Positions 2,179 through 44,145 of a DNA stretch of 64,000 bases are shown in pieces; positions within the stretch are counted from its first letter, which is position 1, and every line of letters starts with the position of its first letter. The stretch spans positions 62,001 to 126,000 of the forward strand of contig NW_024055431.1 of the NCBI RefSeq assembly GCF_902713615.1. The letters run 5' to 3'. Below the pieces are notes generated by a model that saw only the letters and a program-made list of their open reading frames with translations, was not told the origin of the DNA and searched no databases. This stretch comes from Scyliorhinus canicula (lineage: Eukaryota). The translations under genes were made by a program, and so were the position numbers.

Positions 2179-2226
2179 ACTACTTCCAATACTGGGGACA
2201 AGGCACCATGGTGACGGTGACTGCAG
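2179..2226 (+). CDS. IGHJ: JH segment (YFQYWGQGTMVTVTA)
   Basis: WGxG motif; GTAAG donor at 2227. Confidence 0.97.
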
Positions 2227-5699: not shown

Positions 5700-5930
5700 T
5701 CTGGAGGCGCTGGCAAGGCCAGATTTTATTATATATGCCTAAGGGTCCTTGGGAAAGATTTGATGTGAAGCATCCTTGAATAGCTGCAGTCCATGTGGCG
5801 GAGGTATATCTGCAATATTGCTAGGTCCAGAATTTTGACTCGGCGACAGTGAAGGATTGGCAGTATATTTCCAAATCAGGATGGTGAGTGTCTTGGAAGG
5901 GAACTTGCAGGTTTTGGTGCACCCATGCAT
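5700..5930. mobile_element. LINE-derived fragment
   Basis: Shares GGAAxGGAACTTGCAGG and flanks with the repeat fragment at ~50890-51000. Confidence 0.4.
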
Positions 5931-7455
5931 CGATACAAACACATTCACACTCTCACGCTCTCACACACATTCTCTCACAGCCTCACACAAACTAATTCTC
6001 TCACGCACATAATCACAATACATCTTTCAAACATACACACTGTGCCTCACACGCAATCACACACTCACAATCTCACTCTCAGACACACTGTGATGATCTC
6101 TCACTCACACATTCACTCACACGCGCTCTCACTCACACAGGCTCTATCTCACACGCACTCTCTTTCACCAAATCTCTCTGACACACCTTGCCTCTCTCTC
6201 ACACACACTCAAACACAAAGACCGTCTCTCTCCCTCACATACATGCATAATCACTCTTCACACGTAGCATTTTTTCTTTCAGGCTCTCTCTCATACACAT
6301 TCCCTCTGATATACACAAACACAATATCTCAGACGCACACAAACTCGCCAACACATTATTACTCTCTCACTCTCTCGCTCTCGCGCACTCTCACACGCGC
6401 ACCCTGGCACATGCCCTCTCTCTCTCATGGACACTGTCTCATTCTCTCTCTGACACACAATCTGTCTCTTTCAGGCATACAGTATCTCACACCCTCTCTC
6501 ACATTCTCTCTCTCTCTGACACACACACTCTCTCATACGCACATTCTTTCTCTCACACACTCCCTCTCGATCACAGACACACTATCTCAGACACACAGAT
6601 CTCTCTCTCTCTCTCCCACACACAGTCTCACATCCATAATCGCTCTTCGGACAGAATCATTCCTTCTTTCACACACAGAATCTCAAACATACTATCTCTC
6701 TCCCTTTCTCTCACACACACTCCCACAGACACACACGCACCCTGTCACACACATACATTCTCTCACCTGCTGTCTCTCATGCACACTGTGTCTCTCTCAC
6801 ACAAAATCTCTCTCTTTCGCACATGCACACTCTCATACACAAACACACACATACTCACACAAGCACTTATTTCTCTCACACACAAACACTGGTACATACA
6901 TATCTCGTAAACACACTTTCTTTCACTCAAGCACAGACATGTTCTTTGGCACACTCTCACACGTTCTCTCATAAACACACAAACTCGGCCGCACAATCTG
7001 TCCTTCTCAGACACATGGTCTCTCCCTCATACATACACAAACACTCCCACACAAACAGTATCTCGCAAACACATATATTCTCTCACTCAAACTCAGACGT
7101 GTTCTTTGGCATACTCTATCACACGTTCTCAGAAACACACAAACGCGCCCCCACATTCTGTCTCTCTCTAACACACGTGGTCTCTCTCTCACTGTCTGAG
7201 GTACACACTCACACGCTCTCTAATCTCTCACACACACTCAATCATCCACACACTATCTCGAACTCACGCACACAATCTTCCATTTACACGCACTCACACA
7301 CACATTGCCTCTCTCACTCACACACAAAATCTCACACTCACATCCCCACACACACACTCACACATAAACTCTCCCTTGCAAATTATTTTATTCACCCTCT
7401 AACACCTATCTTACATACATACACGTACTCTGTAGGAGTGTGGTCTGTTCAGTTT

Positions 7456-7657
7456 CTGAAAGAATTAAAGCATCTGCCCAGTGATCTACACTGCTGTCTG
7501 ACTGTACACAGGCGGTGTTACTGAAAGTATTAAAGCAGCTGCCCAGTGATCTACACTGCTGTTTGACTGTACACAGCCGGTGTTACTGAAAGTATTAAAG
7601 CAGCTACCCAGTGATCTACACTGCTGTCTGACTGTACACAGCCGATGTTACTGAAAG
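7456..7657. repeat. 3 x 65-bp tandem repeat
   Basis: CTGAAAG(T/A)ATTAAAGCA... restarts at 7456, 7521 and 7586; partial copy at 7651. Confidence 0.9.
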
Positions 7658-7879
7658 CTGATCAATGTGGAGAATCAGGACAGGATCGATGGAGAGGAAG
7701 AGGTGGTGGAGCCCCCAGCTCGGCTGCGGACAAGACAAAAGGAAGCTGAGTCTCAGCGGAAAATCATCCAGAGACACATCGTCATAATGGCTGGGAGTAC
7801 CTGTGAATCATCACTCACCCACGGTCACTCACTCACTCACTCACTCCCACACCCTCACTCACACATCCTCACTCACTCC

Positions 7880-8105
7880 TTTTTAAAAATAAATTTAGAG
7901 TACCCAATCCATTTTTTCTAATTAAGGGGCAATTTAACGTAGACAATCCACCTACCCTGCACATCTTTGGGCTGTGGGGATGAAACCCACGCAAACACGG
8001 GGAGAATGTGCAAACTCCACACGGACAGTGACCCAGAGCCCGGATCGAACCTGGGACCTGGACGCTGTGAGGCAGCAGGGCTACCACTGCACCACCATGC
8101 TGCCC
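7880..8105 (-). mobile_element. HE1/V-SINE-like tRNA-derived SINE
   Basis: GGGCAGCATGGTGG head, GGTTCGATCC B-box and V-SINE-type core; many paralogs in this window. Confidence 0.85.
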
Positions 8106-11100
8106 TTTCACTCACTCCTTCACACACACTTACCCACCGTCACTCACTCACACAGCCTCACTCACTCACACACACATTCTCACACACCCTCACTCACTCA
8201 CACACCCTCACTCACACAGCCTCACTCACCATCACTCACTCACCCACTCACTCACTCACACTCACAGCCTCACTCACTCACACACACCTCCTCACTCACC
8301 CTCACTCACTCACTCACACAGCCTCACTCACTCACATCCACCCTCACTCACATACCCTCACTCACTCGCTAACTCTCACTCACTCACACACACCTCCTCA
8401 CACCCTCACTCACTCATCCACTCTCACTCACTCACACACACATCCTCACACACCCTCATCACTCACACACACATCCTCACACACCCTCACTCACTCACAC
8501 CCACGCTCACTCACACGCCTTCACTCACTCATCCTCACACACTAATGCACACTCTCTCACACACACCTTCACTCACTCACTCACTCTCACTCACACCCAC
8601 CCTCACTCACACACCCTCACTCACTCACTCTCACTCACTCACACCCTCACTCACTCATCCTCACACACTAATGCACACTCCCTCACTCACACGCCTTCAC
8701 TCACTCACTCACCCTCACTCACTCACTCACTCTCACTCACTCACACCCACCCTCACTCACACACCCTCACTCACTCATCCTCACATACTAATGCACACTC
8801 CCTCACTCACACACCTTCACTCACTCACACACCCTGACACACTCACCCACCCCCACTCACACACCCTCATTCACCAACCCTCACTTATCCACCCTCACTC
8901 GCACATCTTCACTCATCCACCCGCACACACACCCTCACTCACATACACTCACTCACCCACCTTCACTTACACGCACTCACCACCCTCCCTGAATCTCCCT
9001 CATTCACCGACTCTCATTTACTCACTCCCACACCCTCACTCACACACCCTCACTCACACGCCCTCACTCACTCCCAGAGCCTCACTCACTCACTTTCACT
9101 CACTCACACCCTCACTCACTCATCCTCACACACTAATGCACACTCCCTCACTCACACGCCTTCACTCACTCACTCACCCTCACTCACTCACTCACTCTCA
9201 CTCACTCACACCCACACTCACTCATCCTCACATACTAATGCACACTCCCTCACTCACACACCTTCATTCACTCACACACCCTGACACACTCACCCACCCC
9301 CACTCACACACCCTCATTCACCAACCCTCACTTATCCACCCTCACTCACACATCTTCACTCATCCACCCTCACACACACCCTCACTCACATACACTCACT
9401 CACCCACCTTCACTCACAGGCACTCACTACCCTCCTTGAATCTCCCTCATTCACCGACTCTCATTTACTCACTCCCACACCCTCACTCACACACCCTCAC
9501 TCACACACCCTCACTCACTCCCACACCCTCACTCACACACCCTCACTCACACGCCCTCACTCACTCACACCCCTCACTGACCCACCCACCCTCACTCATC
9601 CACCCTCACTCACACATCCTCACTCGCACACACTCACTCAGATGCACTCACAACACTTCCTGAATCTCCCTCACTCACCTACTCTCCCTCTCCCACCCTC
9701 ACTCACTCACACAGTCTCACTCACACACCTTCACTCACACACCATCACTCACACACCATCACTCACTCAAACAACCTCACTCACTATAACACCCTCACTC
9801 ACCATCCCTCTCTCACACTCATTGACTCACACTTGCTAGCCCAACCTAAATAGCTCACTCTCATTCACCCACACTGATTCACACACCCTCACTCCCCCTC
9901 ACTCCCCCTCACTCACCCACACTGATTCACTCACCCACCCTCACTCACTCAGCCTCACACACCCACCCTCACGCATCCTCACTAACCCTCTGTCACACAA
10001 CCTCACTCAGTCGCCCTCGCTCATTCACCCTCAGTCACACACGTTCACACTACCCTCATTACTCACCCTCAATCATCTTCACTCACTCACACACCCTCAC
10101 TCATTCTTCCTCGTTCATCCAGCATTATTCACTCACCCACTCTCACTCTCTCAGCCTCATTCACTCACCTACCGACCCTCACTCACCTTCATTCAGTAAC
10201 CCACATACGCACCCAACCTCATTCAGCCTCACACACCCACCCTCAATGATCCTCCTTCAGTCTCTCAGCTCAATCAATCACCCATCCTCACTCACTCACC
10301 CTCACTCACCCACCCACCCTCACTTTCTCACGCTCAGTCACACACCCACCCTCACTCATCCTCATTCAATCACTCAGCTCAATCAATCACCCATCTTCAC
10401 TCACTCACCCTCACTCACCCACCCACCCTCACTTACTCACGCTCAGTCACACACCCTCACATACTCACCCTCATTCACTTACCCTCACTCACTCACCCTC
10501 ACGATCTCAAGCAGTCTCACACCCTCACACACTCACCCTCATTCACTTTCCCTCACCCACCCATGCTCACTCACCCTCACTCACACTGTCCTCACTTACT
10601 CACCCCTTTCATTCACCCACCCACCCTCACTCTCCTTCATTCAGTAACTTACCCTCACTCAGTCACCCACCCTCACTAACACACTCACACACCCACTCTC
10701 CCTCTCCCACTCTCATTCACTCGACCTCACTGACGCCCACAATCACTCACCTCACTCACTCACTTTCTCACTCACACTCACCCACTCACCCACCCTCAGA
10801 AAACTACCCTAACTCAGCCCCACTCACTCAACATCACACCCACCATCACTCCCCCATCCTCTCGCATTCGCCCACCCTGACTCACTGCCCTCTCTCACCC
10901 ACCCTGACTCACTACCCTGACTCACTATCCTGACTCACTACCCTCACTCACACAGACTCACTCACACAGCATCACTCACACAGCCTCACTCACACAGCCT
11001 CACTCACACAGGCTCACACACACAGCCTCACTCACACCGCCTCACTCACAAGGCGTCTCTCACCCCCATTTCCCATGCACGTTCACTCACAATCTCACAC

Positions 11101-11880
11101 ATCCTCATTCACACACCCTCACTCATCCATTTTCCCTCTTACATCCTCACTCAGCCACCCTCACTTACACACACTCATGCACCCACACTTGTTCACCCGC
11201 TCTCAGCCACCGTCACTTACACACACTCACTCACCATCACTCACACACCCTCATTAACTCACTCACCATCACTCACCCAACCTCATTAAATTACCCTCGC
11301 CTCTCACCCTCACTCACTCATGCACCCACTCTCATTCACTCCCTCATTCTTAACCAGCCACTCTTATTCTTTCATTCACCCTCACTCACTCAACCACTAT
11401 CACATACCCTCGCTCACCCACCCACACTGATGCTCCGCCGCTCATACACCCTCACTCACCCAAGTTCACCCACTAATTCTGTTACACACCTCGCTCACAG
11501 CCACACTCATACAGCCTTAACCACCCTCACTCATTCACTCCCACTTATTCATCCTCACTCTTTCACTCTCACTCATTCACCCTCACGCATTGACCTTCAC
11601 TCATTCACCCTCCCCATTCACTCACCCGCAGTCACTAATCCTGCCTCACCCACCCTCACCCACTCACCTTCACCACACAACTTCACTCACAAACTCACCC
11701 TCCAGGCCTCACTCACCCATCCTCACTTATTTTCCACCTCTCACTCACTGTCCCTCACCCATCATGACTCACTCACCCTCAGTGACACACCCTCACCCAA
11801 TTACCCTCACTCAGTCAACCCCCCCATTCTCTTCCACTCATCCACACTCTCATATCCTCAATCACCCAACTCACTCACCC

Positions 11881-12320
11881 ACACTCACTCTCCTACCCTC
11901 ACTCAGTTACTCACTCACCCGCACTCACTCTCCCACCCTCACTCAGTTACTCACTCACCCACACTCACTCTCCCACCCTCACTCAGTTACTCACTCACCC
12001 GCACTCACTCTCCTACCCATACTCAGTTACTCACTCAACCGCACTCACTCTCCTACCCTCACTCAGTTACTCACTCACACGCACTCACTCGCCTACCCTC
12101 ACTCAGTTACTCACTCATCCGCACTCACTCTCCTACCCTCACTCAGTTACTCACTCAACCGCACTCACTCTCCTACCCTCGCTCAGTTACTCACTCACCC
12201 GCACTCACTCTCCTACCCTCACTCAGTGACACACTCACTCGCACTCACTCTCCTACCCTCACTCAGTTACTCAGTTACACACACTCACTCTCCTACCCTC
12301 ACTCAGTTACTCACTCACTC
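11881..12320. repeat. 11 x 40-bp minisatellite
   Basis: Unit (G/A)CACTCACTCTCCTACCCTCACTCAGTTACTCACTCACCC in exact 40-bp register. Confidence 0.93.
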
Positions 12321-12349
12321 TCCTCATTCTCTCTTATTCACGGTCCCTA

Positions 12350-13080
12350 AATCAGCGAGGGAATGTCTGGAACGAGAGAGAAAGAGAGAATTGGGGCGAG
12401 ACATGATCACGAGAGGTTCCCACATGTGTCTGTTGGCCCGGGATTGGGGAGAGCCGGAGGATAGTTCAGAGAGTCGGGAGAAAGCGCCGGAGCCGGGAGA
12501 AAGCGCCGGAGCCGGGAGAAAGAACAAGGAGGCAGGGAAAGGGCAGGAAAGGGGGTGGTGGGGAGGAGGGGGGCAAGCACAGAGATGTGGGAGCCAGGGG
12601 AGAGATTCTGCGGAAAGCTCAGGGAGCCGTCGCAAAGGACAGAGAGCTGGAAGAAAGCGGAGAGAGCAGGGGAAAGGTGCCGAGAGCCGGTGGAAGGTGC
12701 AGAGAGCTGAGAGAATTGCAGTGATCGGGAAGAAACTCAGCAAAGAGTGGGCGATAAGCGGTAAGAGTCCGCGCATAATAATGGCAAAAAACTGAAAGAA
12801 CCGCGGAAAGTACCAGGAACCGGGGCAAACTCCAAAGAACGGGAAAAATGAAGAGCGCATGGACAAAGCAGAACGAGATGGAGGAAAGTGCGGAGAGACA
12901 AAGGAAAAGGCAGAGATGTCGGGGAAAGCCGGAGAGCCGTCTAAAAGAGCAGACAGCTGAAAGAAAGTGAAGGGAGCAGGGGAAAGGTGCAGAGATCCAG
13001 CGGAATGGCAGAGAGATGGGGGAACGAACAGAGAGCGCGGGGCGGGGTGCGGGGGATTGCAGACAGCCCGGTCTCAGTGA
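12350..13080 (+). repeat. Purine/G-rich low-complexity tract
   Basis: GGGAGAAAGCGCCGGAGCC duplicated near 12476-12520; AG(A/G)GAGCAGGGGAAAGGTGC at ~12661 and ~12970. Confidence 0.75.
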
Positions 13081-13096
13081 CAGGCGGAATGCTGTT

Positions 13097-13386
13097 GATT
13101 GTTACGTGCACAGCTCAGTTTGCTGGATTGTGACGTACACAGCTCAGTTAGCTGGATTGTGACGTGCACAGCTCAGTTAGCTGGATTGTGACGTACACAG
13201 CTCAGTTAGCTGGATTGTGACGTACACAGCTCAGTTAGCTGGATTGTGACGTACACAGCTCAGTTAGCTGGATTGTGCCGTACACAGCTCAGTTAGCTGG
13301 ATTGTGACGTACACAGCTCAGTTAGCTGGATTATGACGTACACAGCTCAGTTAGCTGGATTATGACGTCCACAGCTCAGTCAGCTG
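13097..13386. repeat. 10 x 29-bp AGCT-rich tandem array
   Basis: Unit GATTGTGACGTACACAGCTCAGTTAGCTG; 19 AGCT motifs counted; TGACGT in 8 of 10 units. Confidence 0.95.
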
Positions 13387-13470
13387 GACGGCTGGTTCGT
13401 GATGAAGAGCGATCCCAGCAGCGCGGGTTCAATTGCTGCACCGGCTGAGGGTGTTCATAAAGAACCCCAG
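13372..13470 (+). mobile_element. tRNA-derived SINE head (second family) contiguous with the last array unit
   Basis: AGCTCAGTCAGCTGGACGGCTGGTTCGTGATGAAGAGCGA...GGGTTCAATT aligns with the SINE at ~28983-29200. Confidence 0.8.
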
Positions 13471-13817
13471 GACTATGGCGGGGTTTTACATTTTGGAGAA
13501 CATGATGGCTAAAATAATGGGAAAAATCATCCGCTCTTCGCTTTCAATCCAATGAAATTTACATCATTCTGATTACATCAAAATGTTGTTTTTTTGCCAG
13601 GTGATATGGACTGAGAAAAATATGTAAGTTTCCAATGAGGGGCCAAACAGGTGGTGATTCTCAAATGATCGAACTAATAGAAGCTGAAATGTGGATGGAG
13701 CATTTATTGGGAAAATGTTGGAATAAACGCATCATTCTCGTGAATTTTAGAAATGTTTGGTTGCTTAATAAATACAATCCCAGAGTCTAACTTGTTGAAT
13801 GGGCCATTCTCTCCCAG

Positions 13818-14117
13818 CGACACCGTCTCCGCCCACTCTCTACAGCCTGGTCTCCTCCTGTCAGCAACACAACACCGACGGCTCCGTAACCGTTGGCTGT
13901 TTAGCGATGGACTACTCCCCAGAAATCACCAGCCTTACCTGGAAGAAAGATGGGCAGCTGATCACCACTGGAGTTAAGAAATACCCGTCAGTGAGAAACA
14001 AAAAGGGAACCTACACCCTGAGCAGCCAGTTAACCATCACCGAGTCAGAGGGGGAATGCAACAAAATCAGCTGTGAGGTTCGACACAGCGGCTCAGACAA
14101 GAGCATTGAAATTAAAT
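13818..14117 (+). CDS. IGHM: IgM CH1 exon
   Basis: CCCAG acceptor; [14 protein letters not shown]...GCLAMDYSP...WKK...CEV; GTAAG donor at 14118. Confidence 0.96.
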
Positions 14118-14315
14118 GTAAGTGTTGTAGAAACTGTGAGAAACAGACGTTTGATTACTTTATTTAAATCTTTGGTCATAACACATTGATGGTTCTCTGC
14201 ACAGTTCTGATTCCTGCGAGAAATAGTGATCACAGAGAAACTGTTAAAATATAATTAAACATTTTATTCGTCACAACATCTTCTTCAAGAAATGTCTAAC
14301 TTGTGTTTCTTGAAG

Positions 14316-27698: not shown

Positions 27699-28517
27699 AT
27701 GGAGAAACCGTGGAAATGTGGGGATTGTGGGAAGGGATACAGAGTCCCATCTCAGCTGGAAATTCATCAACGCAGTCACACCGGGGAGAGGCCATTCACC
27801 TGCTCAAAGTGTGGGAAGGGATTTACTCAGTTCTCCAGTCTGCAGACACATCAGCGAGTTCACACTGGGGAGAGGCCACTCACCTGCTCTCAGTGTGGGA
27901 AGGGATTTACTCGGTTATCCACACTGCAGACACATCAGCGAGTTCACACTGGCGAGAAGCCATTCACCTGCTCCCAGTGTGGGAAGGGATTTACTCAATT
28001 ATATCACCTGCAGAGACACCTGCGAGTTCACACTGGGGAGAGACCGTTCACCTGTCCTCTGTGCGGGAAAGGATTTACTCGAGTATTCAACCTGCAGTCA
28101 CACCAGCGAGTTCACACTGGGGAGAGGCCGTTCACCTGCTCTCAATGTGGGAAAGGATTTGCTGAAGTATCCAACCTGCGGAGACACCAGCGAGTTCACA
28201 CTGGTGAGAGGCCGTTCACCTGCTCTCAGTGTGGGAAAGGATTTACTCAATTATCTCACCTGCGGACACACCAGCGAGTTCAGACTGGGGAGAGGCCATT
28301 CACCTGCTCTCGGTGTGGGAAGGGATTCACTCGGTTATCTCACCTGCAGTCACACCAGCGAGTTCACACTGGGGAGAGGCCATTGATCTGCTCTCAGTGT
28401 GGGAAAGGATTTACTCGTTTATTCACCCTGCGGAGACACCAGCGAGTTCACACTGGGGAGACGCCGTCCACCTCTCCATGTGAGACAGGATTACATGTTT
28501 CATCGCGCCTCCTGTGA
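27699..28517 (+). CDS. C2H2 zinc-finger protein, 9 fingers (finger 7 lacks its last His), no N-terminal effector domain seen
   Basis: [13 protein letters not shown]... with TGERPF linkers; ATG at 27699; acceptor TTCCAG ends at 27347. Confidence 0.85.
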
Positions 28518-28982
28518 CACCAACAATTTCACAATCGATTACAGGGTTGGATTCTGCTGTTATTGTTTCTGCTCTACAACCAGGACTGCATTTTGTTCAT
28601 TCTGACACGTGGTAAGTGGGGATGGTCGGAGGGTTTCTTTCTGCTGGACTAGCCGGTCTCACCACTTTGCCTCCAGTGGGCTGATGCTCTTTGAGCCTTG
28701 TTGCTAATACCTGGCTTCAAATTGCACAAGGATCTCAGAGTGAAAGGGTGTTTGGAAGTTTGAAGATATTTAGTTTCCATTTCTGTTTGGAACCCCCAAA
28801 GCATGCCACGTTGCCATGGAGATGGGCCCTGGTGGTTACATGGTTCTTTTGTATAATTTATATGGGTGTTCCTCACAGAAGAAAACTATCAGGGTATGAG
28901 GGGCAAGTTGTCTGAGGTGGATTGGGAAACTGATTGTTACAGGGAATACCTACTATTTAAGGAATTATTACATATTTATCAG

Positions 28983-29200
28983 GGGGTCGGTTAGCTCAGT
29001 TGGCTGGACGACTGGTTTGTGATGCAGAGCGAGGCCAACAGTGAGGATTCAACTCCCGTACTGGCTGAGTTTATTCATGAAGGCCTGCCCTTCTCAACCA
29101 GGCCCCTCGCTTGAAGTGTGCTGACCCTCGGGTTAAATCACCTCCAGTCAGCTCTCTCTCTGTCAATGGCGAGAGCAGCCTATGGTCCTCTGGGAATTTT
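28983..29200 (+). mobile_element. tRNA-derived SINE (second family)
   Basis: TAGCTCAGTTGGCTGG A-box; related copies at 13372, ~24395-24485 (-) and ~34535. Confidence 0.75.
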
Positions 29201-29239
29201 GCAACATTTATTTCACATATATACAACAAATATAGATTC

Positions 29240-31841: not shown

Positions 31842-31914
31842 CGAGCCAGCCAGGAATCGAACCTCGAATCTCCTGATTCGTAGTCAGACGCATTATCCAT
31901 TGCGCCACTGGCCC
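31842..31914 (-). tRNA. tRNA-Arg(ACG), variant
   Basis: GGGCCAGTGGCGCAATGGATAATGCGTCTGACTACGAATCAGGAGATTCGAGGTTCGATTCCTGGCTGGCTCG, 73 nt, cloverleaf; TTTT terminator about 11 nt downstream. About 5 differences from the recalled vertebrate Arg-ACG sequence. Confidence 0.88.
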
Positions 31915-35495: not shown

Positions 35496-35685
35496 GAGGG
35501 GTAGAGGACATTTACGAGAAAGGCACCAGAGATGAGGGACTCAGTTGAAGTGACTGGAGCAGCTGAATTTCTCTCCTGAGATCACAGCATGTGGAGGGTG
35601 GGGAATGGGGCCATTCAGCCCTTTGGGACCATGTCAGCTCTCTGTTTAGGAAGCCAGTCTGTCCATTGCCTCATTCTGTCCCCGA

Positions 35686-37150
35686 ATCCCTGTGGGTTTA
35701 TTTCTCTGCGTGCCTGTCCAATCCCTGTGGGTTTATTTCTCTGCGTGCCTGTCCAATCGCTGTGGGTTTATTTCTCTGTGTGCCTGTCCAATCCCTGTGG
35801 GTTTATTTCTCTGCGTGCCTGTCCAATCGCTGTGGGTTTATTTCTCTGTGTGCCTGTCCAATCGCTGTGGGTTTATTTCTCTGTGTGCCTGTCCAATCGC
35901 TGTGGGTTTATTTCTCTGCGTGCCTGTCCAATCACTGTGGGTTTATTTCTCTGCGTGCCTGTCCAATCCCTGTGGGTTTATTTCTCTGCGTGCCTGTCCA
36001 ATCGCTGTGGGTTTATTTCTCTGCGTGCCTGTCCAATCCCTGCGGGTTTATTTCTCTGCATGCCCCTCCAATCCCTGTGGGTTTATTTCTCTGCGTGCCT
36101 GTCCAATCGCTGTGGGTTTATTTCTCTGCGTGCCTATCCAATCGCTGTGGGTTTATTTCTCTGCGTGCCTGTCCAATCCCTGTGGGTATATTTCTCTGCG
36201 TGCCTGTCCAATCCCTGTGGGTTTATTTCTCTGCGTGCCTATCCAATCGCTGTGGGTTTATTTCTCTGCGTGCCCTTCCAATCCCTGTGGGTTTATTTCT
36301 CTGTGTGCCCGTCCAATCCCTGTGGGTTCATTTCTCTCAGTGCCCGTCCAATCCCTGTGGGTTTATTTCTCTGTGTGCCCGCCCAATCGCTGTGGGTTTA
36401 TTTCTCTGCGTGCCCGCCCAATCTCTGTGGGTTTATTTCTCTGCGTGCCTGTCCAATCGCTGTGGGTTTATTTCTCTGCGTGCCTGTCCAATCCCTGTGG
36501 GTTTATTTCTCTGCGTGCCTGTCCAATCGCTGTGGGTTTATTTCTCTGTGTGCCTGTCCAATCTCTGTGGGTTTATTTCTCTGCGTGCCTGTCCAATCGC
36601 TGTGGGTTTATTTCTCTGCGTGCCTGTCCAATTGCTGTGGGTTTATTTCTCTGCGTGCCTGTCCAATCCCTGTGGGTTTATTTCTCTGTGTGCCTGTCCA
36701 ATCGCTGTGGGTTTATTTCTCTGCGTGCCTGTCCAATCGCTGTGGGTTTATTTCTCTGCGTGCCTGTCCAATCCCTGTGGGTTTATTTCTCTGCGTGTCC
36801 CTCCAATCCCTGTGGGTTTATTTCTCTGTGTGCCTGTCCAATCGCTGTGGGTTTATTTCTCTGCGTGCCTGTCCAATCGCTGTGGGTTTATTTCTCTCCG
36901 TACCTGTCCAATCGCTGTGGGTTTATTTCTCTGCGTGCCTGTCCAATCGCTGTGGGTTTATTTCTCTGTGTGCCTGTCCAATCGCTGAGGGTTTATTTCT
37001 CTGCGTGCCTGTCCAATCGCTGTGGGTTTATTTCTCTGTGTGCCCGCCCAATCGCTGTGGGTTTATTTCTCTGCGTGCCTGTCCAATCGCTGTGGGTTTA
37101 TTTCTCTGCGTGCCCGCCCAATCGCTGTGGGTTTATTTCTCTCAGTGCCC
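35686..37150. repeat. 42 x 35-bp minisatellite
   Basis: Unit TGTGGGTTTATTTCTCTGCGTGCCTGTCCAATC(C/G)C; first unit at 35691, last at 37126. Confidence 0.97.
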
Positions 37151-37532
37151 GTCAAATTTCGTATTGAAATCCTTCCGTCATTTCTGCATCACCTACGCTC
37201 ATAGGCAGTAGGTTCCAGGTTGTTACCTCTCTCTTTACATGTACACAAGGCTCCTCGAGCACAGAGGAGTCTAATTGGCCTATTTTTCCCGTGCCAGCTC
37301 TGTACAGTGACCCATTTAATCCCAGAGTTCGACTATTTTGGGTTTTTTTCAGAATGCATCAACTTCCCTTTTGGAAGTTACAGTGCAATGAGATTCCAGC
37401 ACCATTTATAGACAGTGCATTCTAAATCACAACAACTCGCTGTGTTTTACAACAAATAATTGTGCATATGGTGTGTCTGGAGTATCTCACAGTATCAAAA
37501 TGGTGTCAACGCCTTGGTTATTACACAATTTA

Positions 37533-43023: not shown

Positions 43024-44145
43024 TTACTTGTGGCCTCGTTGGTGTCTCAGCAGGTTGGGTGAAGTGGTGAATCGCTTCCCACACTGTGAGCAGGTGAATG
43101 GCCTCTCCCCAGTGTGAACTCGCTGGTGTGTGAACAGAGCGAATGACTGCGTGAATCCCTTCCCACACTTGGAGCAGGTGAAAGGTCTCTCCCCAGTGTG
43201 AACTCGCTGGTGTGTGGACAGGGCGGATGATTGAGTGAATCCCTTCCCACACTCGGCACAGGTGAATGGCGTCTCCCCAGTGTGAATTCTCTGGTGTGTG
43301 GACAGATTGGATGACTGAGTGAATCCCTTCCCACACTCGGCACAGGTGAATGGCCTCTCCTCAGTGTGAATTCGCTGATGTACAGTGAGGTCACATGATC
43401 GTCTGAATCCAGTCCCGCAGTAAGAGCACCTAAACGGTCTCTCGTCGGTGTGAGCACCCTGATGGTTCATCAGATTCCCAGAACTTTTATAGCGCTTCCC
43501 ACAGTCTGGACATTGAAACGGTCTCTCATCAGTGTGAACTCGCTGGTGACTCAGCAGGTGGGCTGAAATAGTAAATCCCTTCCCACACTCTGAGCAGGTG
43601 AATGGCCTTTCCCCAGTGTGAATTCGCTGGTGATTCCGTAGGGCCGATGAATCACTGAATCCTTTCTCACACTCTGAGCAGGTGAATGGTCTCTCCCCAG
43701 TGTGAACACGCTGGTGTCTGGACACAGCGGATGACTCAGTGAATCCCTTCCCACACTTGGGGCAGGTGAATGGTCTCTCCCCAGTGTGAACTCGCTGGTG
43801 ACTAAGCAGGGCGGATGACTTAATGAATCCCTTCCCACACTTGGAGCAGGTGAATGGCCTCTCCCCAGTGTGAACTCGCTTGTGTATGGACAGAGTGGAT
43901 GACTGAGTAAATCCCTTCCCACACTTGGAGCAGGTGAATGGTCTCTCCCCAGTGTGACTGCGTCGATGAGTTTCCAGCTGGGATGGGGAAGTGAATCCTT
44001 TCCCACAGTCCGCACATTTCCACGGTTTCCCCTCCGTGTGACTGCATTTGTGGCTTGTGAGGCCTGATGATTGACTGAATCCTTGTCCACACGCACAACA
44101 CGTGTACGGTTTCTCCCCACTGTGAACAATGCTTTTTCCTTCCAT
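43024..44145 (-). CDS. C2H2 zinc-finger protein, 13 intact fingers
   Basis: [16 protein letters not shown]...RHQRGHK*; ATG at 44145; acceptor TTTCACAG with exon starting at 44253, frame open from the acceptor. Confidence 0.9.

What the first reader, a model, noticed from the sequence alone, without database searches (positions are those of the whole stretch)
13097..13470. AGCT-dense array built from a tRNA-SINE A-box, 430 bp upstream of Cmu1: candidate proto-switch region or enhancer
Seen: 10 x 29 bp containing 19 AGCT palindromes (about 1 per 15 bp versus about 1 per 256 at random) and TGACGT in 8 units. The last unit runs directly into a SINE body matching the SINE at ~28983, so each unit is 5' flank plus the SINE A-box (AGCTCAGTTAGCTGG). 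Established: AGCT is the overlapping AID hotspot that marks tetrapod switch regions, including the AT-rich Xenopus S-mu; sharks lack canonical S regions, though switching between IgH clusters has been reported in nurse shark. Inference: a retroposon junction was amplified into an AID-target array or CREB/ATF site cluster at the position where S-mu lies in tetrapods.
Basis: partly seen in the sequence, partly recalled or inferred. Interest (0 to 1): 0.85.

Follow-up and report, generated by a model that had tools for sequence, protein, structure and literature searches.

The report
SINE-head minisatellite before shark Cmu1
A real 29-base repeat, copied ten times from the front end of a jumping element, sits just before the first constant exon of a shark IgM gene; it looks like a small antibody class-switch region, but is most likely an ordinary minisatellite whose look-alike motifs came with its parent sequence.

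Summary
At 13097-13388 there is a 29-bp x 10.1 tandem array, 96% matches, with 19 AGCT and 8 TGACGT. It runs into a 5'-truncated tRNA-derived SINE and ends 429 bp before Cmu1, at the 3' end of an 11.6-kb JH-Cmu1 intron.

The AGCT density is inherited. One AGCT per unit is the SINE's A-box. The other is a single G-to-A change that was amplified with the unit.

The array is not private to this cluster:
- The scan noted the same array before, on at least twelve other pieces of this genome, always 0.4-0.9 kb before Cmu1. I did not read those stretches.
- Contig depth in two DNA runs is more than 100 times single copy.

The listed paralogous array contigs diverge about as much as the one listed paralogous flank contig. 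The array is ten times shorter than the shortest known switch region, is not G-rich, and lies about 11 kb from JH.

My reading is a neutral SINE-derived minisatellite carried along as the IgM clusters duplicated (0.6). A minor role as an AID target (0.13) or in regulation (0.15) is not excluded. RNA contigs from one study hint at an unspliced transcript running from the array's 3' edge into Cmu1. Function was not testable here.

The parts
13097..13388 (+). 29-bp x 10.1 tandem array. Each unit is 13 nt of non-SINE sequence (TTGTGACGTACAC) plus 16 nt of SINE head with the A-box (AGCTCAGTTAGCTGGA). It holds 19 AGCT and 8 TGACGT.
   Evidence: TRF, motif counts, and units in register with 9 variant positions, the two edge units being the most diverged.
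13373..13462 (+). 5'-truncated, diverged copy of a tRNA-derived SINE (A-box, B-box-like GGTTCAATTGC). Its first 16 nt are also the SINE part of the last array unit.
   Evidence: 70/90 ungapped identity to the full copy at 28993-29082. Bin depth is 18,111 against about 9 for single copy, and SINE-head loose ends sit at 13373.
12400..13096 (+). G/A-rich tract directly before the array. It is a degenerate repeat of about 20 bp of the type GGGGAAAGGTGCAGAGAGC. Counted over 12340-13096 it has GGGG x19, GAGC x14 and AGCT x4.
   Evidence: GC skew +0.44 in 12501-13000. Autocorrelation is 0.417 at lag 20 against 0.31 expected. TRF rows at 12471-12522 and 12661-12707.
2179..2226 (+). JH segment, with RSS heptamer at 2172-2178 and splice donor at 2227. 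It marks the start of the 11,591-bp JH-Cmu1 intron.
   Evidence: WGQGTMVTV motif and heptamer. The JH end is seen spliced to Cmu1 in RNA contigs (table 7, X14 at 13815).
13818..14117 (+). Cmu1 (CH1) exon of an IgM cluster.
   Evidence: Translation. The ORF matches C1-set domain proteins of Scyliorhinus torazame (92%) and Mustelus asterias (76%). RNA contig depth is about 25,000 in X14.
28982..29215 (+). Full-length copy of the same SINE family, used as the reference for the head and body.
   Evidence: Sequence, alignment, and a weak sub-threshold tRNA match at 28985-29067 (13.6 bits).

Best explanation
This is a SINE-derived minisatellite.

- A tRNA-derived SINE inserted, 5'-truncated, about 0.4 kb upstream of Cmu1 in an ancestral IgM cluster.
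- Replication slippage or unequal exchange then duplicated a 29-bp block in tandem. The block is 13 nt of flank plus the first 16 nt of the SINE.
- The array was carried into many IgM clusters as the cluster family expanded, and its copy number drifts between clusters.
- Its AGCT and TGACGT density is a by-product of which 29-mer happened to be amplified. No dedicated function needs to be assumed.

Shown here: the anatomy, the SINE origin, the multi-copy state, and transcription as part of the IgM primary transcript. Inferred: the slippage mechanism, inheritance by cluster duplication, and neutrality.
For: - Perfect 29-bp register, 96% identity, and edge units most diverged. This is the usual pattern of slippage or unequal-exchange homogenisation.
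- The SINE boundary lies exactly at 13373, defined by loose ends from hundreds of other SINE copies.
- One AGCT per unit is the canonical tRNA A-box. The second is one G-to-A change.
- Tandem arrays are very common in this window: 81 TRF rows.
- Array bins reach summed contig depth 1012-1580 in X1, against 9.3 for a single-copy flank contig and 213-485 for Cmu1. A second organism label shows 57-314 against about 3.5. This is a rough measure.
- The listed paralogous array contigs differ from the window by 7-12% (records 2-5). The one listed paralogous flank contig (record 6, 9%) differs about as much; a second contig on the same flank stretch (record 7) is identical. So there is no extra conservation (table 8).
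- Tandem repeats born from parts of SINEs are a described phenomenon (PMC10702118).
- The scan's first readers noted the same array 0.4-0.9 kb upstream of Cmu1 on at least 12 other pieces, 174-812 bp long. These are leads that I checked only indirectly.
Against: - The array sits at the tetrapod S-mu position and directly follows a G-rich GAGC/GGGG repeat tract.
- Its local AGCT density equals that of real S regions.
- It seems to be kept in many clusters. Summed array depth is higher relative to the flanking intron (41-118) than simple co-inheritance predicts. That could mean wider retention, or simply longer arrays elsewhere.
- All 10 units keep their CpG.
- RNA contigs from one study start at the array's 3' edge and run unspliced into Cmu1. 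This hints at local promoter activity.
- Neutrality is an inference from a few listed contigs, not from a full comparison of paralogues.
Confidence: 0.6

Rival explanations
1. Proto-switch element. The array, together with the adjoining G-rich 20-bp repeat tract, forms an AID-hotspot patch of about 1 kb that raises the chance of double-strand breaks in the JH-Cmu intron. That would feed the inter-cluster isotype switching reported in nurse shark, in the way the AT-rich, AGCT-rich Xenopus S-mu works.
For: - 65 AGCT/kb, against 3.4/kb in the window.
- Position 429 bp upstream of Cmu1, inside the transcribed intron. Array contigs are present in an IgM-rich RNA run (X14).
- G-rich non-template tract directly upstream.
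- AGCT-rich sequence without R-loops can support CSR: Xenopus S-mu in place of mouse S-gamma1 gave about one quarter of the activity (PMC2442634).
- The array is multi-copy across clusters. Scan notes also report 3-5 kb G-rich, AGCT-bearing arrays upstream of CH1 in other IgM and IgW clusters (unverified).
Against: - It is only 292 bp. S regions are 1-10 kb, and CSR frequency scales with length (PMC2442634).
- The motif density is explained by its origin.
- It lies about 11.2 kb from JH with no demonstrated upstream intronic promoter. SHM-type AID activity reaches 1-2 kb (PMC2212980 abstract).
- Reviews state that shark loci lack switch regions and that switching accompanies SHM (PMC4279169, PMC4588147, PMC8201067).
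- The two AGCTs of a unit pair with each other in a 5-bp hairpin in single-stranded DNA. That would partly hide them.
- There is no extra conservation compared with the flanks.
Confidence: 0.13
2. Cis-regulatory element. The 8-9 CRE half-sites (TGACG), or the SINE's A/B boxes, act as a promoter or enhancer for an intron-initiated sterile Cmu transcript, comparable to germline I-promoters in tetrapods.
For: - In RNA run X15 a 473-nt contig (depth 19, 3 differences) runs unspliced from 13372 into Cmu1. The unique intron at 12556-13067 has depth 0, and the Cmu1 exon has only 49. So about 40% of Cmu1 RNA is unspliced, against about 0.1% in the IgM-rich run X14.
- Four samples of the same study hold 0.26-0.29 of an intron-only query. 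That is the share expected for 13372-13810 alone.
- TGACGT occurs 8 times in 292 bp, against 6 in the rest of the window.
Against: - There is no full CRE (TGACGTCA), no octamer and no TATA near the array.
- Contigs break at repeats, and the tool warns that a hole proves nothing. So the 5' end is not mapped, and the contig may come from a near-identical paralogue with a different upstream sequence.
- All of this rests on one study.
- Pol III cannot explain the contig, because T-runs at 13484-13595 would terminate it.
Confidence: 0.15
3. Assembly artefact, or a copy number wrongly resolved in this assembly.
For: Short tandem arrays are often collapsed or expanded in assemblies. No listed contig spans the whole array.
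Against: Array-bearing contigs are present in independent DNA runs of two organism labels and in RNA runs. Contigs cross the array-to-SINE junction (X1 record 5, 13312-13433; X14 record 20, 13351-13450).
Confidence: 0.04

Closest known systems
SINE-derived tandem repeats or satellites (sSats of squamate reptiles, PMC10702118)
   Same: The tandem unit is built from a portion of a SINE and arose next to, or from, a SINE copy. Amplification is modest rather than satellite-scale. It occurs at several loci.
   Different: The unit here is a chimera of 16 nt of SINE head plus 13 nt of non-SINE flank. All known copies appear tied to one gene family, the IgM clusters, and spread by gene-cluster duplication rather than to subtelomeric regions. 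The host is a shark.
Xenopus S-mu (AT-rich, AGCT-rich switch region)
   Same: It lies in the intron upstream of Cmu1, is tandemly repetitive, has a high density of the AGCT palindrome, and lacks the strong G-skew or R-loop potential of mammalian S regions.
   Different: Xenopus S-mu is kilobases long, lies in a translocon locus with downstream acceptor S regions and an I-promoter, and has been shown to support CSR (PMC2442634). This array is 292 bp, has no shown germline transcript through it, and no shown recombination.
Mammalian S-mu ((GAGCT)nGGGGT repeats)
   Same: The position upstream of Cmu1 and the AGCT density match. The adjoining tract at 12400-13096 is G-rich on the non-template strand, with GAGC and GGGG motifs.
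   Different: The array itself has no GAGCT (0 in the array) and a unit GC skew of only +0.14. It is more than 10-fold shorter. Upstream of the G-rich tract, the preceding 6.3 kb of intron is strongly G-poor on the non-template strand, the opposite of an S region.
ATF/CRE site clusters in germline I-promoters
   Same: Repeated TGACG half-sites lie just upstream of a CH1 exon, with a hint of a transcript starting nearby.
   Different: There is no palindromic CRE, no binding or activity data, and the sites are copies of one amplified 29-mer.

Membership tests
Immunoglobulin switch (S) region | Lies in the intron 5' of the CH1 exon of a constant-region gene | tested here: met
   The array ends 429 bp before Cmu1 (13818), inside the 11,591-bp JH-Cmu1 intron.
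Immunoglobulin switch (S) region | Long tandemly repetitive tract, 1-10 kb | tested here: not met
   The array is 292 bp. Adding the degenerate G-rich tract brings it only to about 1 kb. The length criterion is from PMC2442634.
Immunoglobulin switch (S) region | High density of AGCT/WGCW AID hotspots | tested here: met
   19 AGCT in 292 bp and 22 WGCW, 19-fold over the window average.
Immunoglobulin switch (S) region | G-rich non-template strand or R-loop potential (mammalian type only; absent in Xenopus) | tested here: not met
   The unit has 8 G and 6 C. G-richness is confined to the neighbouring tract at 12400-13096.
Immunoglobulin switch (S) region | Germline transcription through the tract from an upstream I-promoter | tested here: inconclusive
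   The array is present in RNA contigs of an IgM-rich run at pre-mRNA level (X14). Another study shows a contig that starts at the array's 3' edge, not upstream of it (X15). 5' ends cannot be mapped from contigs.
Immunoglobulin switch (S) region | Site of AID-dependent breaks and recombination junctions in B cells | not testable with these tools
   This needs B-cell DNA reads. Only contigs could be laid, and only once.
SINE-derived tandem repeat (minisatellite or sSat) | The repeat unit contains a segment of a SINE | tested here: met
   16 of 29 nt equal the SINE head with 1 mismatch. The family boundary at 13373 comes from loose ends.
SINE-derived tandem repeat (minisatellite or sSat) | Head-to-tail copies in register, contiguous with the parent SINE copy | tested here: met
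   TRF gives 10.1 copies with 0% indels. The last unit continues into the SINE body.
SINE-derived tandem repeat (minisatellite or sSat) | Present at more than one locus | tested here: inconclusive
   Summed contig depth is more than 100 times single copy, and diverged array contigs exist. At least 12 scan notes report it on other pieces. I could not read those loci myself.
CRE/ATF-dependent enhancer or promoter | Consensus CRE (TGACGTCA) or functional half-sites bound by CREB/ATF | tested here: inconclusive
   There is no full CRE in the array, one 7/8 match at 13363, and TGACG half-sites in 9 of the 10 units (8 as TGACGT plus TTACGT... no; 8 TGACGT units and none further with TGACG), so 8 units carry the half-site. 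Binding is not testable.

The most novel reading that the evidence does not exclude
The IgM clusters of this shark carry a compact amphibian-type switch patch just upstream of Cmu1. It consists of a SINE-head array with two AGCT per 29 bp, next to a G-rich GAGC/GGGG repeat. The patch would be kept across the cluster family because it concentrates AID-induced breaks for inter-cluster isotype switching. If so, switch-region-like targeting sequence predates the tetrapod translocon locus and was recruited from a retroposon.
Probability: 0.12. Interest if true: 0.8.

Novelty: new member of a known kind. Interest (0 to 1): 0.38.

Why it matters
Reviews state that cartilaginous fish have no switch regions, although VDJ exons can be joined to constant regions of other clusters (PMC4279169, PMC4588147, PMC8201067).

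If this genome's IgM clusters regularly carry AGCT-dense or G-rich repeats right before Cmu1, a concrete test follows: do somatic mutations and inter-cluster junctions fall there? This particular array is probably the weakest candidate among them. It is short, and its motifs are inherited from a SINE head.

It does show how a retroposon A-box can seed an AID-hotspot array by accident. That is a plausible raw material for switch-region evolution, even if this copy is neutral.

Tried and rejected
- **Whole unit derived from the SINE.** I tested whether the whole 29-mer comes from the SINE by an 8-bp internal deletion, based on a TTGTGA match. The match is not better than shuffles (1584 of 5000), so I rejected this. 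The 13 nt are treated as flank.
- **DNA of other shark IgM clusters.** I tried to fetch it through protein hits (Mustelus asterias, Scyliorhinus torazame). The look-up of encoding contigs listed the genes but returned no DNA because the files are too large.
- **Exact-pattern scans.** Scans of metagenome and prokaryote genome collections for the unit gave 0 hits. No eukaryote genome collection was searchable, so cross-species conservation could not be tested. The second organism label in the runs is 99-100% identical in the unique intron, too close to be informative.
- **Rfam.** Nothing is above threshold in or near the array. The MIR860, mir-5365 and snoRNA rows are far below gathering scores and reflect hairpins between repeated palindromes.
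- **ORFs.** No ORF of 60 aa or more crosses the array.
- **Promoter motifs.** There is no octamer in the first 22 kb, no TATA between 12300 and 13900, and no full CRE.
- **Long inverted repeats.** None involve the array.
- **Primary papers on shark switching.** Zhu et al. 2012 and Zhang et al. 2013 are not held. What they say about intron repeats could not be checked.
- **Somatic AID footprints.** These cannot be seen in contigs.

Full report
**Observation.** Tandem Repeats Finder reports one clean array at 13097-13388: period 29, 10.1 copies, 96% matches, no indels, consensus GATTGTGACGTACACAGCTCAGTTAGCTG.
- In register, six units are identical to the consensus. The nine variant positions fall mostly in the two edge units, three each.
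- The array holds 19 AGCT (65/kb) and 8 TGACGT. The window averages 3.4 AGCT/kb, and nine other tandem arrays of the window have 0-10/kb.
- The counts are therefore right and far above background. Statistically they are one 29-mer with two AGCT, copied ten times.

**Gene context.**
- A VH exon lies at about 634-960. D1 and D2 with their RSS lie at about 1389 and 1780. JH is at 2179-2226, with its heptamer at 2172-2178.
- Cmu1 is at 13818-14117, followed by Cmu2-Cmu4.
- An RNA run with very high Cmu1 coverage shows JH spliced onto Cmu1 (table 7, X14).
- The Cmu1 ORF is closest to Scyliorhinus torazame (92%) and Mustelus asterias (76%) proteins. This is therefore an IgM cluster of a carcharhiniform shark.
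- The array lies in the last 0.7 kb of an 11,591-bp JH-Cmu1 intron, 429 bp before Cmu1.
- The intron is strongly G-poor on the sense strand from about 6000 to 12300 (GC skew -0.6 to -0.9). It then flips to a G/A-rich tract at 12400-13096 (skew +0.44) with a degenerate 20-bp periodicity, GGGG x19, GAGC x14 and AGCT x4. The array follows directly.

**Origin.**
- The last unit continues into a SINE body. Positions 13373-13462 match the full copy at 28993-29082 at 70/90, ungapped. That full copy gives a weak, sub-threshold tRNA match.
- When contigs of four runs were laid on the region, the SINE body bin reached depth 18,111, against about 9 for single-copy flank.
- Contigs of other SINE copies lose similarity exactly at 13373, where they read GGGGGCTGGTTT.
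- So the copy here lacks about 11 nt of the SINE's 5' end. Of each 29-bp unit, 16 nt (AGCTCAGTTAGCTGGA) are SINE head with the A-box, and 13 nt (TTGTGACGTACAC) are not SINE.
- I tested whether these 13 nt could come from the SINE body by an internal deletion. The match is no better than shuffles.
- One AGCT per unit is the tRNA A-box itself. The other arises from one G-to-A change relative to the SINE (GGCTGG to AGCTGG), present in 9 of 10 units.

**Distribution.**
- In DNA run X1 a single-copy flank contig has depth 9.3, Cmu1 bins sum to 213-485, and array bins to 1012-1580.
- In a run with another organism label (X13) the flank is about 3.5 and the array 57-314.
- The tool warns that summed contig depth is not a copy number, and some contigs fit two places. 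Qualitatively, though, the array sequence is present many times over.
- The X13 flank contigs are 99-100% identical to the window, so that organism is too close to test conservation.
- Listed paralogous array contigs differ from the window by 7-12% (records 2-5). The one listed paralogous flank contig (record 6) differs by 9%, and a second contig on the same flank stretch (record 7) is identical to the window. So the array shows no extra conservation in this small sample (table 8).
- The scan's first readers independently noted the same 29-bp SINE-head array 0.4-0.9 kb upstream of Cmu1 on at least twelve other pieces of this genome, 174-812 bp long. They also noted much longer (3-5 kb) G-rich, AGCT-bearing 39-bp arrays upstream of CH1 in other IgM and IgW clusters. 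I could not read those loci. The notes agree with the depth data but remain unverified.

**Expression.**
- In X14 (Cmu1 depth about 25,000) the unique intron on both sides of the array sits at about 10. This is consistent with pre-mRNA, and it shows the array is transcribed within the primary transcript.
- In X15 (Cmu1 depth 49) a 473-nt contig of depth 19 runs unspliced from 13372 into Cmu1, while 12556-13067 has no coverage.
- Four samples of that study hold 0.26-0.29 of an intron-only query, the share expected for 13372-13810 alone.
- This suggests a transcript starting at or near the array-SINE junction. However, contigs break at repeats, holes prove nothing, and a near-identical paralogue with a different upstream sequence is possible.
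- No octamer, TATA or full CRE lies nearby. T-runs downstream argue against a Pol III read-through.

**Interpretation.** The best-supported reading is a SINE-derived minisatellite inherited across the IgM cluster family. Its switch-like motif content is a by-product of the amplified unit. Tandem repeats born from SINE parts are known (PMC10702118).

Points against a dedicated switch role:
- It is 292 bp, against the 1-10 kb of S regions, where efficiency depends on length (PMC2442634).
- It has no G-skew, and its divergence is like that of its flank.
- It lies about 11 kb from JH, whereas SHM reaches 1-2 kb (PMC2212980 abstract).
- Reviews agree that sharks lack S regions and that switching accompanies SHM (PMC4279169, PMC4588147, PMC8201067).
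- In single-stranded DNA the two AGCT of each unit pair in a 5-bp hairpin (z = -3.5).

Points for a switch or regulatory role:
- It sits at the S-mu position next to a G-rich GAGC/GGGG tract.
- AGCT-rich, non-R-loop sequence is known to support CSR (Xenopus S-mu, PMC2442634).
- It recurs across clusters.
- There is a hint of a transcript starting at its edge.

I put the neutral reading at 0.6, a contribution as an AID target at 0.13, a regulatory role at 0.15, and an assembly artefact at 0.04.

**Novelty.** This is a new example of a known kind (a SINE-derived tandem repeat) in an interesting place. Its value is as one component of a testable question, whether shark J-C introns carry switch-like sequence. 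It is not a demonstrated proto-switch region.

Noticed in passing
window 13372-13844: In RNA run X15 a 473-nt contig (depth 19) runs unspliced from the SINE head into Cmu1. The unique intron upstream (12556-13067) has no coverage, and the exon has only depth 49. Three more samples of the same study hold the same share of an intron-only query. This may be an intron-initiated sterile Cmu transcript. An ATG at 13799 is in frame with Cmu1.
   Followed up: partly
window 5925-13096: The JH-Cmu1 intron has about 6.3 kb of TCAC-type, G-poor low-complexity repeats on the sense strand (GC skew down to -0.92). It flips abruptly to a G/A-rich tract of about 700 bp with 20-bp periodicity and GAGC/GGGG motifs. 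The scan already noted this as s1-286493.
   Followed up: partly
protein P0001: A 132-aa 'hypothetical protein' filed under Salmonella enterica, on a 480-bp contig, is 87% identical to this shark Cmu1 exon. This looks like shark DNA contaminating a bacterial assembly.
   Followed up: no
window 31842-31914 (-): A tRNA gene scores above the Rfam gathering threshold (47.6 bits). It is the only Rfam hit in the window.
   Followed up: no
window 35685-37157: A large homogeneous tandem array, 35 bp x 42 copies at 93% matches, with no AGCT. It shows how common young minisatellites are in this region.
   Followed up: no
window 27776-28492 and 43067-43957: Repeats of 84-bp period on opposite strands encode C2H2 zinc-finger arrays (the TGEKPF-type linker is visible in the consensus). 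ZNF genes therefore flank the IgM cluster.
   Followed up: no
window 12300-14200, run X13: Contigs of a run labelled as a different organism are 99-100% identical to the window in unique intron sequence. It is either a very close sister species or a labelling issue.
   Followed up: no
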